From: Dimorphilus gyrociliatus
Taxonomy: Eukaryota; Animalia; Annelida
Direction: 5' to 3'
Assembly (NCBI GenBank): GCA_904063045.1
Contig: CAJFCJ010000019.1
Coordinates: 682,001-746,000 of the forward strand
DNA length: 64,000 nucleotides
The number at the start of each line of letters is the position of its first letter. The stretch's first letter is position 1. Positions 18,201 to 22,205 of the stretch are shown in pieces. The notes beneath the pieces were generated by a model, which made no database searches, was not told where the DNA came from, and saw nothing but the letters and a program-made list of their open reading frames with translations. The position numbers and the translations under genes are program-made.

Positions 18201-19812
18201 AAACAGAAAGACTCCTTATGAACGTTCGTCATACTTATATTGTCAGTAGATAACGTGTAATCTATTATACAAGGATGTTCCATTGTTGTAATAATATCCG
18301 ACTTCATATAATTAGTAATAATAACAATTGTACAATTAGTTCTCTCTTCAAATAGCTTCATTTTTAAACCGCAAACTGAACCAGAATTCCTGTCAAATAA
18401 CGAGAACGATTGACATATTTGATAGCTTTTAGAATGGCATTCTTTTTCCATTCTACATTCTTGTTCTAGAAGAATAATATCTTCAATTAAATAATACCAA
18501 ATCAATAAAACATACAAATATTTTAAAATCATTATTTTGGGATTAAAATAAAAACAATAGGTTATTTATAAGTATTAAAATATTTATAAGCCTATATTAG
18601 TGATTATTTCTACATTGCCCCGTATTTCTTACTTAGTTATTTAGTTAGTACTCAAAAAGAAACTACTCAATTGTAAAGTATAAATTTTTTATTTTAATTC
18701 TTTTTTTAGACCAATTAACGAACAGACAGTATCAACAGCAACAACAGTATAAAGATATTGAAAAAGAGGAATTAAGATGCGAGTTAAACGATATAAAAGT
18801 CGAATTGGAACGAGTTAAATCCGAAAGAGCAAACTTAATTAAACAAGTTAGAAATGATAGCGAACATATTGATGATAAGATAAGAAAAAATGAAAAAATA
18901 TGTAATTAATATCTAAATTAAAATTACAAAAAAAAAGCAATAATTTTATAATATTTATTTATTTAATTAAAAAGATACGGACGAAATTAATCAATTAAAG
19001 AATCGAATTGGCGAATTGCATGCTGAAAATTTGGCTATTGAAGAGAAAAAAAACTATTTAGAGAAGAATTTGGAGAAAATACAAGAAAATGTTACTGAAC
19101 TTGAGAATTGTTTGGATGCTGAGAGAAAGAATTTAGTAGAAAGTAAGTTATTAATTATATTATCCCTATCTGACTCTCTGACACATACGCATACACATTC
19201 TCTCTATCTATCTGTCTAAGTATGTTTAATTCTGTTTAATAGTATTTACACTTTCCTTCTTTTCCCATCAAACTAGATACTGAAAAAGCTAAACAAGAAC
19301 TAAGAATTGAATATTCGGATCAAATTAATGATTTACAATGGAAATTAACAGAAAGTAGGAAAGAACAAACTAGAGCAGGTTCTATTTTTTTATTCTACTC
19401 CATCCTTAGTTTATTCGTTAGTTTATAATTTTATTATTTTAGTTTTGAATATACGCCAATTGGAAAGATCTTTAGAGAGATGTAAACAGGATCTAGAGAT
19501 GGAGAAACATAATGTAATTGAAGAAAATGATAAAATTCGAAAGCATTTACAAAGCTCCGAAAGAGAAAAGAATATTCTTATTGGAAATATAAATGATTCT
19601 TTATTTAAAGATTATTCTTCTTTACGAAAAAAGCCAGCTAGTTTTTATGAGAATGGTAATTTTAAATTCTTTAATGTCTTCTTCCGTTAATTAAATTCAC
19701 TATTTTAAACATGATAATCAATTTAGAAGAGAATAAGAATATGGATAATCTTTTGGAAGAATTGGAAGAACTGTCGTCAGAAACTCTCAGGGATTCGAAT
19801 GATGTTGAATAG
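15232..19812 (+). CDS. CCHCR1: Coiled-coil alpha-helical rod protein 1 homologue, many short exons
   Basis: Motifs matching recalled human CCHCR1: LLPPTHF (LIPPSHF), LLTK|WRQEVWKLLV (LLNRWREKVFALMV), ILSFDRRISFAGNRIQFIQ (LPSLNNRLSYAVRKVHTIR), C-terminal LLEELEELS (LLDDLQDLS). Confidence 0.75.
17487..18532 (-). CDS. Orphan type I membrane receptor-like protein (~323 aa; exons 18532-18109, 18034-17487), nested antisense in a CCHCR1 intron
   Basis: Hydrophobic N-terminus, Cys-containing ectodomain, in-frame 74-nt GT-AG intron, TM IILPCFFIGFSLLIMLIIFVIY, and a cytoplasmic tail with YEND, YEEL and YENR. Confidence 0.75.
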
Positions 19813-20493
19813 GTTTATTTTTCAACAAGCATTTTAAATATGGGCACAGAGATTTTTATACGAAAATTCTCACTCTCTTTCCTCTCCTCTCCTTCGCTTT
19901 CCTTCTTACTCTCTCTCTCTCTCTCTCTTCTACGCTCGTTCTCGCTCATTCCTTATCTTACTATAACGTTTATGAAAAACTTGAAAAAAATAAAGGAGAG
20001 GAAAATAATCGTTCTAGTAACGCCATCTCGTAGCCATATCTGCCAAATAATATTAATGTTAATATTTTTTAGTCTATCTATTTAAAGCCTAAAGTAACTG
20101 AATTTTTTTCAATTTGTAAAAAGTTCTTATTCTGTTTTTTATTAATATTTGAATTTATAAATAAAAAAAAACCATTTTTTAGGTTTTTTTGTATAATTTT
20201 ATCAAAACAAAACTGTTTATTTAATCTGGGATGTTTTTTTTATCTTTTATTTAAGATTAGCTTTATACAGAATTCCCTTCTCTTTACATAGCGAAATTGC
20301 ATAATTTTTTATGATATGAATAACGTGATCCTCCTTGCAAACTTGACTATTGAATTATATCTAGAAATTCATCAACGACGTAATATATATAATCAAGTAG
20401 TAAACTAATATATTATATAGATAAAACGATTTTCTTTCACTAGAATATAGTAGATAACAATCACTAGAAATTAAAGAACAACTCCTCTTGAAT

Positions 20494-21899
20494 TTATGAT
20501 TTCTCGTGAATAAATCGCATATTTGTAGTTAATTCAATTCTATCGTGAATATATTCTTGAATAATTCCAGCTTTTGGACCTTTTTCACTGTCGTCCGATT
20601 CTATTACATTATTCATTAATTCACGAATACCCCTAAGTCGGATAATAATGGCACTATGGTCATTTGCATGAGCTCCTATTAATATACTGTCGGGGGTATC
20701 TATCGTTAGGCCTACCGGAAATATAAAATCCTCTTCTATGTATAATGGCCTTTCCAGAGGTGAACTTTCGTAAATTTCAGAATTGAGTTTTATCGGATCA
20801 CTTATATACACTATCCGCCATATAGGCTCAACGCTTAGGACGACCAAATGCGCTGTATAAAATCGTTTCGACGTTCTCTCTTTGAATAACGTATTGTGAA
20901 CGATGCTGATATAATAGGGTTGTTTGTAACTTAAAAAGGGGGTTCCCCCACGCAAATGAATTGCGTAATCTCTAAAACCGTCTTGAAGTTTTTCCTGATG
21001 AATAAATTTACAATCCGCCTTTAAAGGTAGTCCATCGCATTGAAGAACTCTTAACGGATCAAGACTATGAATAAAGTATAAGTTATCCTTATAAGTTAGA
21101 GACATCCAATGCTTATCTCTCTTCATTCCAGAGTTTTTCAGATCTCTTAGTATTGGGCTTCCTCCTACAGAGTTTGAAAAGACTAATGATGCATTCAAAT
21201 ACAATTTGTGTTTTAAGTACCTGTAATCTTTGGAAAGATGGGAATATCTCTATTATAATTCCAAAGAACGGTGCTATCTACGCTCACTTTCCTTGATAAA
21301 GCCATTGCAACGTTAAACGACACGTACGCTTCTCCTTTAAACTCGAATAATCTTGGTTCAATTGGACCATCTCCTACCCAAAACTGTTTAGGTGATGGTA
21401 TGCCTAAAAATTTACCCGAAGTGATGGGCGACATATTACTATCAAATGTTTGAGTGTATAATATATTATCGTAAAAATCGTTGGATGGCCAATTCTTCTT
21501 TGCCTCATATTTCTCTCTTACAAGCCAAATTCTTGATACTAATAATAGATTATCTTTGTACCAAATTATGGCTGGGCTATTTGCGACAATTGTCTGTTGC
21601 TTTATTGGGTCGATAAGCCTCCTTTCAACTTCGTGTTCGATATAAGGCGTGAAAGAATGAGCTAAAGATGAAATAGTATTTACGGTTAATTTCTTGGATG
21701 CTCCCTTTTCATTAAACATTGATCCAGAAAGATCAAACGTATAATCATACGTATCGGGAGTTTTCAGTTTTCTCTCCCACAACGCATGCATATGATAATA
21801 ATTATTTATTAGAAATAATGTAAAAGTAACAACTGATAATACTCCAATACCAAGCACCAATTTCCTTATAAATCCTTTGTTGATGTTGAGAATGCGCAT
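20494..21899 (-). CDS. Type II membrane five-bladed beta-propeller glycoenzyme, GT91 (BMT)/GH130-like (exons 21899-21221, 21164-20494)
   Basis: N-terminal TM anchor LVLGIGVLSVVTFTLFLI. Motifs NSPAIIW, GPIEPRLF, RDKHWMSL, HLRGGTP, YISIVH, FIFPVGL and GAHANDH. One 56-nt GT-AG intron. Confidence 0.65.
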
Positions 21900-22205
21900 G
21901 ATTTCTTCACAGAAGATGAATACGGAGAATTCGAAATTTAATTGATTACCGAATAAGTAATGAAGAATTAGATTTTTCCAAAAAGCAACTTTAAGGCTGG
22001 TCACGTTTCTCAGGCTGTCACGATTTCAATGCAGGTTGATAGGCATAAAAGGGTAAGCAAAAGATATTCAATATTACAAATTGTGCTGCCATCTCTTGTA
22101 TAATTTTACAATGTAGTTTCTTTTAATAAATGAACAGTGACAATAAGAGTAATTAGGTTTTTGTATTTTATTAAAAACAAAGGTAAAATATAAAATCAAA
22201 AAATT

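What the first reader, a model, noticed from the sequence alone, without database searches (positions are those of the whole stretch)
20494..21899. Animal Golgi-type protein resembling fungal beta-1,2-mannosyltransferases (GT91) / GH130 propellers
Seen: type II TM anchor, stem, then motifs in the order NSPAII, GPIEPRLF, DKHW, LRGGTP, IVH, FPVGL, GAHAND, with one canonical intron. Established: this order matches five-bladed beta-propeller enzymes with EDPR, EKNW and RGGT motifs (Candida BMT/GT91, GH130 phosphorylases, Leishmania GT108). Vertebrate glycosylation is not known to use them. Here EDPR reads IEPR and EKNW reads DKHW. Inference: an undescribed invertebrate glycosylation activity (beta-mannan-like surface glycans), possibly acquired horizontally and later intronised.
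Basis: partly seen in the sequence, partly recalled or inferred. Interest (0 to 1): 0.7.

Follow-up and report, generated by a model that had tools for sequence, protein, structure and literature searches.

The report
Worm Golgi enzyme of fungal beta-mannosyltransferase type
This small marine worm (Dimorphilus gyrociliatus) has an expressed, conserved gene for a membrane-anchored five-bladed propeller protein related to the fungal enzymes that add beta-linked mannose to cell-wall sugars; I found no paper describing this enzyme type in animals, which points to an unstudied kind of animal glycosylation.

Summary
A minus-strand, two-exon gene (CDS 21899 to 20494) encodes a 449-residue type II membrane protein. 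One 56-nt GT..AG intron (21165-21220) is removed in a 1722-nt transcript contig. All the listed motifs are present in the stated order.

The genome is that of the annelid Dimorphilus gyrociliatus. The database model DgyrCDS11445 starts 36 residues too late and so lacks the membrane anchor.

The AlphaFold2 model (pLDDT 92.9) is a five-bladed beta-propeller. It is closest to GH130 mannoside phosphorylases (Z 21-24), then to Leishmania GT108 (Z 19-19.6). A family profile aligns with a bona fide fungal BMT/GT91 at 97.3% probability (E 1.8e-11, 268 columns). The gene's own Pfam BMT score (23-24 bits) is below the 28.3-bit cutoff.

Named relatives are all spiralian animals, in many paralogues, apart from one Euglena sequence and one giant-virus sequence. 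The gene tree groups the annelid copies and separates phyla, so recent horizontal transfer is not supported. The intron is a gain within the dinophilid lineage.

The gene's clade has fixed IEPR and DKHW in all 72 sequences, where other members have xDPR and EKNW.

Most likely function: a Golgi inverting glycosyltransferase, probably a GDP-mannose-dependent beta-mannosyltransferase. This is inferred, not shown. No paper describing the family in animals was found.

The parts
21900..22009 (-). 5' untranslated region, as far as the transcript contig reaches
   Evidence: The contig of run X1 starts at 22009. There is no ATG on the minus strand before 21899.
21221..21899 (-). Exon 1 coding part: ATG at 21899, residues 1-226 plus the first base of codon 227
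   Evidence: ORF list, transcript contig, script.
21807..21863 (-). Type II signal anchor, residues 13-31
   Evidence: Kyte-Doolittle 19-residue mean of 2.3, with a basic N-terminal tail. The homologues have an N-terminal hydrophobic stretch at the same place, as does the close relative L008.
21351..21368 (-). GPIEPR motif (residues 178-183). It aligns with GPEDPR of other family members and of a fungal BMT. E181 is the putative catalytic carboxylate.
   Evidence: Alignments. It lies at the start of the strand at 144-151 of the model.
21165..21220 (-). 56-nt GT..AG intron, phase 1, inside a Gly codon (ITG|GSP)
   Evidence: The contig skips it. The database protein P0001 uses the same splice. 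The same position and phase occur in the relative L008.
20494..21164 (-). Exon 2 coding part: residues 227-449 and the stop codon at 20494-20496
21106..21117 (-). DKHW motif (residues 243-246), aligned with EKNW elsewhere in the family
20938..20955 (-). LRGGTP motif (residues 297-302). R, G, G and T are invariant in A1.
20659..20676 (-). GAHAND motif (residues 390-395). D395 is conserved in 71/72 sequences of the gene's clade and 86/96 of the rest.
20232..20493 (-). 3' untranslated region. An AATAAA at 20246-20251 lies about 14 nt before the contig's end.
   Evidence: The contig runs 68 nt beyond 20300. The sequence is printed.

Best explanation
The gene encodes a Golgi/secretory-pathway type II membrane protein. 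Its lumenal domain is a GH130-like five-bladed beta-propeller and belongs to the same superfamily as the fungal GT91 beta-1,2-mannosyltransferases (Pfam BMT).

Most likely it is an inverting glycosyltransferase that takes a sugar from a nucleotide sugar in the lumen, probably GDP-mannose, and puts it in beta linkage on a glycan acceptor of glycoproteins or glycolipids. The conserved residues on the first strand of each blade (E181 in GPIEPR, D243-K244-H245-W246, R298 in LRGGT, H316, D395) would line the central cavity. By analogy with GH130 and GT108, the carboxylate acts as the catalytic base or proton-relay residue and the basic residues hold the donor phosphate.

The gene belongs to an old, vertically inherited, multi-paralogue spiralian family. 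Its own clade has remodelled the catalytic motif (ED to IE, E.N to D.H), which suggests a changed acceptor or donor fit.

Shown here: gene structure, transcription, topology signal, fold, homology, conservation and phylogeny. Inferred: localisation, donor, linkage and catalytic roles.
For: - Gene model and transcript.
- Type II anchor. It is conserved in homologues.
- Fold: AF2 pLDDT 92.9, pTM 0.93. The top 26 Foldseek PDB hits are all GH130. VIA-align gives Z 21-24 for 21 GH130 entries with about 280-300 aligned residues, Z 19-19.6 for GT108 MTPs, then a drop to about 17 for GH43/62.
- Homology to GT91: Pfam BMT E 1.7e-5 to 3.3e-5 for this gene. 34 of 41 relatives match BMT. hhalign against a 575-bit bona fide BMT gives 97.3%, E 1.8e-11, with the PR, W, two Cys and RGGT aligned. 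A model of that BMT also matches GH130 best, at Z 20.4.
- Active-site-like conservation: 72/72 sequences have E at the Asp position, and K, W and R298 are invariant there. The motifs lie at the first strands of successive blades.
- Basic residues are kept. GH130 hydrolases replace the phosphate-binding basic residues with carboxylates (PMC4599007), so this pattern fits a transferase or phosphorylase rather than a hydrolase.
- Two invariant Cys fit a lumenal disulfide.
- Purifying selection: dN/dS about 0.11.
- Giant-virus relatives are fused to, or lie beside, glycan-synthesis genes.
Against: - The Pfam BMT score is below the gathering cutoff, and only the middle of the model matches.
- The carboxylate that is Asp in 83 of 96 other members is Glu here, and the preceding Glu is Ile. 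In GH130 BT3780 both the E141Q and D142N mutants are dead (PMC4599007), so activity or specificity may differ greatly.
- No sequence-level link to GH130 or GT108 was found. I could not superpose residues because the tools do not return coordinates.
- As far as I know, mammals lack a Golgi GDP-mannose transporter. Whether Dimorphilus has one was not tested.
- No glycan with such a linkage is known to me from these animals.
Confidence: 0.6

Rival explanations
1. Same fold and topology, but a glycosyltransferase with a different donor or linkage (not GDP-mannose, or not beta-1,2). The clade-specific IEPR/DKHW remodelling would mark a new specificity.
For: I180/E181 and D243/H245 are fixed in 72/72 sequences of the gene's clade, against E-D and E..N in the rest. 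In GH130 the Glu before the catalytic Asp contacts the +1 sugar (PMC4599007), so its loss implies another acceptor. The best structural matches of this protein are beta-1,4 Man-Glc phosphorylases, although these are tied within about 2 Z units with the beta-1,2 enzymes.
Against: Every characterised member of GT91, GT108 and GH130 cited here acts on mannosides. The late Asp (D395), whose counterpart binds mannose O4/O6 in GH130 by motif order, is conserved.
Confidence: 0.2
2. A membrane-bound degradative enzyme: a GH130-like beta-mannosidase or mannoside phosphorylase acting in the secretory or endolysosomal lumen, or at the cell surface.
For: The closest solved structures are GH130 phosphorylases and hydrolases.
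Against: Sequence homology is to GT91 transferases, not to GH130. There is no PF04041 hit for this gene. The basic residues that GH130 hydrolases replace with carboxylates are kept. A type II anchor with a short tail is the usual Golgi transferase layout (general knowledge).
Confidence: 0.08
3. A catalytically dead, sugar-binding pseudoenzyme or lectin that kept the pocket but lost chemistry when Asp became Glu.
For: The Asp-to-Glu and Glu-to-Ile changes fall at the positions that are essential in GH130 BT3780.
Against: A carboxylate is retained. The change is fixed across 72 sequences from several phyla, all other pocket residues are invariant, and dN/dS is about 0.11. Paired changes (E to D at 243 alongside D to E at 181) look like compensation rather than decay.
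Confidence: 0.08
4. A contaminant or a recently transferred fungal, viral or bacterial gene in the assembly.
For: The family is best known from fungi. Most animal copies lack introns in the catalytic domain.
Against: A spliceosomal intron is removed in the transcript. The AT-rich flanks carry animal genes (notes). The orthologues follow annelid, brachiopod and bryozoan relationships. The bona fide BMT and the giant-virus sequence lie across a 91/94 branch.
Confidence: 0.02

Closest known systems
[quoted passage not shown]
   Same: Homologous over about 270 columns (hhalign 97.3%, E 1.8e-11). Both have an N-terminal region ahead of the catalytic domain, which here holds a type II anchor. The GP..PR, K.W, two-Cys and LRGGT motifs come in the same order. 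The modelled fold is the same.
   Different: - Pfam score below cutoff (23-24 against 28.3 bits).
- Much shorter: 449 aa against 709 for the bona fide BMT used here.
- IEPR and DKHW instead of EDPR and QKNW/EKNW.
- A separate spiralian clade in the tree.
- Animal host, and activity untested.
GH130 beta-mannoside phosphorylases and hydrolases (e.g. 5AY9 RaMP1, 3WAS BfMGP, 9EQQ Uhgb_MS, 5A7V BT3780)
   Same: Five-bladed beta-propeller: Z 21-24, rmsd 3.4-4.2 A, 274-304 aligned residues. An acidic residue before PR at the start of a blade, and a late Asp. Some beta-1,2 GH130 enzymes also use GDP-mannose weakly (PMC12814180).
   Different: No detectable sequence similarity (no PF04041 hit). The GH130 enzymes cited here are bacterial and, as far as I know, soluble, whereas this protein is membrane-anchored and lumenal. 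Glu stands where GH130 has its invariant Asp.
Leishmania GT108 mannosyltransferase/phosphorylases MTP1-4 (6Q4W-6Q50)
   Same: Same propeller fold (Z 19-19.6). GDP-mannose-dependent beta-1,2-mannosyl transfer with a catalytic Asp and a Lys/Arg/His/Tyr phosphate site (PMC10913872). This is the only GT family so far with a solved structure of this fold.
   Different: No sequence match. As far as I know the MTPs are soluble enzymes that make the intracellular reserve mannogen. They were acquired from bacteria by horizontal transfer, which is not the pattern seen here.
Giant-virus and phage GH130/BMT-like propeller proteins (Pithovirus, Mimivirus, Indivirus; GVMAG locus L001)
   Same: Structural matches at E 3e-12 to 1e-9. 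L001 encodes a 589-aa protein with GGEDPR, EKNW and LRGGS motifs, 32% identical to residues 180-315 of the query.
   Different: They keep the canonical ED/EKNW motifs, are fused to other glycan-synthesis domains, and group with the fungal BMT side of the tree.

Membership tests
GT91 / Pfam PF12141 (BMT) | Match to the Pfam BMT model at or above its gathering score (28.3 bits) | tested here: not met
   24.1 bits for exon 2 and 23.2 bits for P0001; only model positions 271-395 match. Orthologues and paralogues do pass (P0011 35.8, P0006 29.7, P0003 28.9 bits). 34/41 and 31/40 relatives match at E<0.01.
GT91 / Pfam PF12141 (BMT) | Homology to a bona fide BMT across the catalytic domain | tested here: met
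   The A1 profile against P0258 (BMT 574.9 bits, full-length model match) gives hhalign probability 97.3%, E 1.8e-11, 268 columns.
GT91 / Pfam PF12141 (BMT) | Conserved motif set GPEDPR / (E/Q)KNW / Cys..Cys / LRGGT | tested here: inconclusive
   G, P, P, R, K, W, both Cys and RGGT are kept. ED is IE and E.N is D.H in all 72 sequences of the gene's clade. A carboxylate is retained at the Asp position.
GT91 / Pfam PF12141 (BMT) | Placement inside the fungal BMT clade | tested here: not met
   The bona fide BMT, BMT-like and giant-virus sequences lie across a 91/94 branch from the spiralian sequences. The query is in an annelid clade at 98/97.
GT91 / Pfam PF12141 (BMT) | Type II membrane protein with a lumenal catalytic domain | tested here: met
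   Hydrophobic anchor at residues 13-31 after a basic tail; two invariant Cys in the domain. Localisation itself was not tested.
GT91 / Pfam PF12141 (BMT) | GDP-mannose-dependent beta-1,2-mannosyl transfer | not testable with these tools
   Needs an enzyme assay.
GH130 | Five-bladed beta-propeller of the GH130 type | tested here: met
   Z 24.1, rmsd 3.8 A, 301 aligned residues to 5AY9. 21 GH130 entries score Z 21-24, above all other families.
GH130 | Match to Pfam PF04041 or sequence similarity to solved GH130 chains | tested here: not met
   No PF04041 hit at E<=1 or among A1 members. No PDB sequence hit with the single exons or with the profiles. Two distant A2 members hit PF04041 at E 0.0028.
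GH130 | Invariant catalytic Asp (e.g. D142 of BT3780) | tested here: inconclusive
   By motif order the equivalent position is E181. Residue-level superposition was not possible because no coordinates are returned.
GT108 | Same fold as the Leishmania MTPs | tested here: met
   Z 19.0-19.6, 271-276 aligned residues, for 6Q4W, 6Q4X, 6Q4Y, 6Q4Z and 6Q50.
GT108 | Sequence membership | tested here: not met
   No hit to the MTP chains in PDB sequence searches at E<=10.

The most novel reading that the evidence does not exclude
Spiralian animals (annelids, brachiopods, bryozoans, nemerteans, orthonectids) run a Golgi glycosylation route of the yeast type that is unknown in animals. In it, a family of GH130-fold propeller transferases caps glycans with beta-linked mannose. 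These may work downstream of the GT15 Kre2-like alpha-mannosyltransferase noted elsewhere in this genome, and would need a Golgi GDP-mannose supply. The IEPR/DKHW clade would be a new catalytic variant with its own acceptor. If so, these would be, to my knowledge, the first beta-propeller glycosyltransferases described in animals.
Probability: 0.3. Interest if true: 0.8.

Novelty: new variant of a known kind. Interest (0 to 1): 0.6.

Why it matters
GT91 is described in the literature as a fungal family without a crystal structure (PMC8476585). GT108 of Leishmania is the glycosyltransferase family for which the papers read here report a five-bladed propeller fold.

This work shows four things. 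The GT91-type domain models as a GH130-like propeller. A large, old, multi-paralogue branch of it lives in spiralian animals as Golgi-type membrane proteins. One sub-branch has rebuilt the catalytic motif. The genes are transcribed and under purifying selection.

That makes a concrete question testable: do lophotrochozoans make beta-mannosylated, or otherwise unusual, secretory glycans? It also offers natural Asp-to-Glu variants for studying the proton-relay mechanism shared by GH130 and GT108.

Tried and rejected
- The word search with an alignment of distant members (A2) was swamped by candidates and gave only three hits. It cost the last search of that kind. It did name P0125 as Lineus.
No scan of prokaryotic genomes was made, so I say nothing about prokaryotic relatives beyond the Atlas hint.
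- PDB sequence searches with the exons and with both profiles gave only chance hits. The link to GH130 and GT108 rests on fold and motif order, not sequence.
- Cluster look-ups and contig look-ups for unnamed relatives mostly returned no organism. The taxonomic range of the roughly 1900 relatives is therefore known only from about 25 named sequences.
- I considered inferring linkage (beta-1,4 or beta-1,2) from the order of the GH130 matches and rejected it, because the Z values are tied within about 2.
- I considered a link to chaetae, because annelids and brachiopods share them. I dropped it, because nemerteans and orthonectids, which have no chaetae (my own knowledge), also carry the family.
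- The joined full-length 449-residue model was never built or sent to any search. The exons were searched by reference, and the public protein P0001 (413 aa, same splice, lacking the first 36 residues) stood in for the joined part.

Full report
**What is in the sequence**

The region holds two minus-strand ORFs, 21213..22004 and 20494..21204. The word search shows the exon-2 ORF is 98% identical over 97% of its length to DgyrCDS11445 (P0001, 413 aa) of the annelid Dimorphilus gyrociliatus.

A 1722-nt contig of public run X1 lies on the minus strand from 22009 to 21220 and from 21163 to 20300, plus 68 nt further. It has no mismatches and skips 56 nt whose ends read GT..AG on the minus strand. 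The run's kind is not on record. A contig that lacks the intron, starts 110 nt before the ATG and ends about 14 nt after an AATAAA (20246-20251) is an mRNA.

The intron is therefore 21165-21220, phase 1. Exon 1 CDS is 21221-21899 and exon 2 CDS is 20494-21164. There is no ATG between 22009 and 21899, so translation most likely starts at 21899 and gives 449 residues. The public model starts at an internal Met, 36 residues later, and so loses the membrane anchor.

Residues 13-31 form a strongly hydrophobic stretch (Kyte-Doolittle 2.3) after a basic tail. The homologues carry an N-terminal hydrophobic stretch at the same place. So does the closest relative, whose N-terminus is alignable from the first residues.

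**Handling of the spliced model**

I did not build or submit the joined 449-residue model. For steps that need the joined domain I used the public protein P0001, which a tool returned and which uses the same splice.

**Fold**

With a 41-sequence family alignment (A1), AlphaFold2 gives pLDDT 92.9 and pTM 0.93, almost all beta. Foldseek against the PDB puts GH130 enzymes in the first 26 places (E 6.5e-9 to 3e-6).

VIA-align results:
- Z 21.0-24.1 for 21 GH130 entries (274-304 aligned residues, rmsd 3.4-4.2 A)
- Z 19.0-19.6 for the five Leishmania GT108 MTP entries (and 18.9 for 2B4W, a Leishmania hypothetical protein)
- a step down to about 17 for GH43, GH62 and other five-bladed propellers

The strand pattern gives five groups of about four strands. 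GPIEPR, DKHW, LRGGTP and FPVGL each lie at the start of a group. In this fold those are the inner strands that line the central pocket (general knowledge).

**Family**

Pfam gives only BMT (PF12141): 24.1 and 23.2 bits, E 1.7e-5 and 3.3e-5, below the 28.3-bit cutoff and covering only model positions 271-395. Several relatives pass the cutoff, and 34 of 41 A1 members match at E<0.01.

A bona fide BMT turned up in the searches (P0258: 574.9 bits, full model). The A1 profile aligns with it at 97.3% probability, E 1.8e-11, over 268 columns. GDGPIEPR falls on YGPEDPR, RDKHW on TQKNW, and both Cys and LRGGT are matched.

I also modelled that BMT (pLDDT 68.5, pTM 0.75). Its best PDB matches are beta-1,2-specific GH130 enzymes (Z 20.4), then GT108 (Z 17). 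So in these models GT91 has the GH130/GT108 propeller fold. A 2021 fold survey still listed GT91 as fungal, without a crystal structure and predicted to adopt a novel fold (PMC8476585). The alignment behind the BMT model is made mostly of the relatives found here, which is a caveat.

No sequence-level link to GH130 or GT108 exists for this protein. Two distant members touch PF04041 at E 0.0028. The ESM Atlas holds a bacterial cluster whose members carry both families.

**Range and history**

The word search found 101 relatives and the exhaustive profile search found 1920 at E<=1e-3.

Every named animal sequence is spiralian:
- Annelids: Capitella, Ridgeia, Paralvinella, Owenia, and a second Dimorphilus copy
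- Brachiopod: Lingula, at least seven proteins
- Bryozoans: Watersipora, Bugula
- Nemertean: Lineus
- Orthonectid: Intoshia

One Euglena gracilis transcript and a giant-virus MAG protein also belong. Most relatives are unnamed, so the true range is open.

In an IQ-TREE analysis of the 25 labelled sequences, the query lies in an annelid clade (98/97) inside a spiralian clade (99/98). The BMT, BMT-like and viral sequences lie across a 91/94 branch. Holding all animal sequences together costs 1.3 log-likelihood units (p-AU 0.246), so one animal origin is not rejected. Euglena's position inside the animal set is weakly supported (88/77).

Recent horizontal transfer is therefore not supported. Any transfer would predate the spiralian radiation and cannot be resolved here.

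The intron sits at the same codon and phase in the closest relative (L008; 67 nt). The following lack it:
- Capitella, whose catalytic domain is one exon
- Lingula, which is intronless
- the Dimorphilus paralogue, which is intronless
- Watersipora, whose intron lies elsewhere

It is a lineage-specific gain. dN/dS against L008 is about 0.11, with dS near saturation.

**A fixed change at the catalytic motif**

In the 72 sequences of the query's clade, the motif is I-E-P-R (71 of 72 I, 72 of 72 E) and D-K-H-W (72, 72, 71, 72). In the 96 other sequences the second position is Asp in 83, the first is most often Glu, and the later motif is mostly E-K-N-W.

In GH130 BT3780 the matching pair is E141 (a +1 sugar contact) and D142 (the invariant candidate acid). 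Both the E141Q and D142N mutants are inactive (PMC4599007). In GT108 the catalytic Asp works with a Lys/Arg/His/Tyr phosphate site and a late Asp that holds mannose (PMC10913872).

Here K244, R298, H316, the Tyr residues and D395 are conserved throughout. That pattern fits a phosphate-bearing donor (transferase or phosphorylase) rather than a hydrolase. The equivalences rest on motif order. I could not superpose residues.

**Reading**

The best-supported explanation is a Golgi-type inverting glycosyltransferase of the GT91 superfamily, probably using GDP-mannose to add beta-linked mannose. Its clade has a remodelled acceptor or catalytic site.

My confidence is high for homology, fold, topology signal and vertical inheritance. 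It is moderate at best for the donor and linkage. Rivals are another donor or linkage, a degradative GH130-like enzyme, and a pseudoenzyme or lectin. Contamination or recent transfer is contradicted.

**Literature and earlier notes**

No paper in the searchable library mentions PF12141, DUF3589 or GT91 in animals. The library is incomplete, and the public databases already hold these proteins as 'uncharacterized', some with automatic BMT hits.

The scan had already noted the intronless paralogue on another contig (s1-083271; I found it independently as P0065/L007, 1383 nt). It had also noted an animal-clade GT15 Kre2-like mannosyltransferase in this genome (s1-081614, not tested here). The GT15 note suggests, as a lead only, a yeast-like Golgi mannosylation route in spiralians.

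Noticed in passing
window 21792-21899 (minus strand): The public gene model DgyrCDS11445 (P0001) starts at an internal Met and omits the first 36 residues, including the membrane anchor. The transcript contig and the conserved N-terminus of the relative in L008 support the upstream ATG at 21899.
   Followed up: yes
L001 1933-3702 (giant-virus MAG GVMAG-M-3300023174-148): A 589-aa protein with an unidentified N-terminal half and a BMT-like C-terminal half (GGEDPR, EKNW, LRGGS). From their sequences its neighbours look like a small glycosyltransferase-like gene and an NAD-dependent sugar epimerase/dehydratase-like gene, but I did not check them against family models.
   Followed up: partly
L003 949-3267 (P0199, ENA metagenome contig): A 772-aa protein joins a strong BMT domain (119 bits) to an FkbM-type methyltransferase domain. 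It lies next to a gene with weak GT34 and DUF273 hits. The organism is unknown.
   Followed up: no
P0174 (EukProt, Euglena gracilis transcript): A euglenid homologue groups among the animal paralogues rather than with the fungal BMT, with weak support (88/77). The family is therefore not limited to fungi and animals.
   Followed up: partly
P0063, P0067, P0117, P0264, P0154, P0155 (Lingula); P0075, P0078, P0102, P0126, P0148, P0262 (Owenia): Large paralogue sets within single spiralian genomes, spanning both the IEPR/DKHW clade and clades with the canonical xDPR/EKNW motif.
   Followed up: partly
P0152 (837 aa), P0197 (907 aa): Unnamed proteins with two copies of the EKNW/RGG motif set, which suggests tandem double-propeller versions of the domain.
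   Followed up: no
window 19815-20085: A CT/GA-rich simple-repeat stretch (ORFs reading SLSLSL and ERERER) lies just downstream of the gene's 3' end. A coiled-coil-like ORF sits at 19445-19690 on the + strand.
   Followed up: no
L007 1501-2883 (Dimorphilus contig CAJFCJ010000001.1): A second, intronless Dimorphilus copy (P0065, 460 aa, 44% identical) lies between an eIF-5/eIF-2B-domain gene and another gene. It is the same length as the earlier scan note s1-083271.
   Followed up: partly
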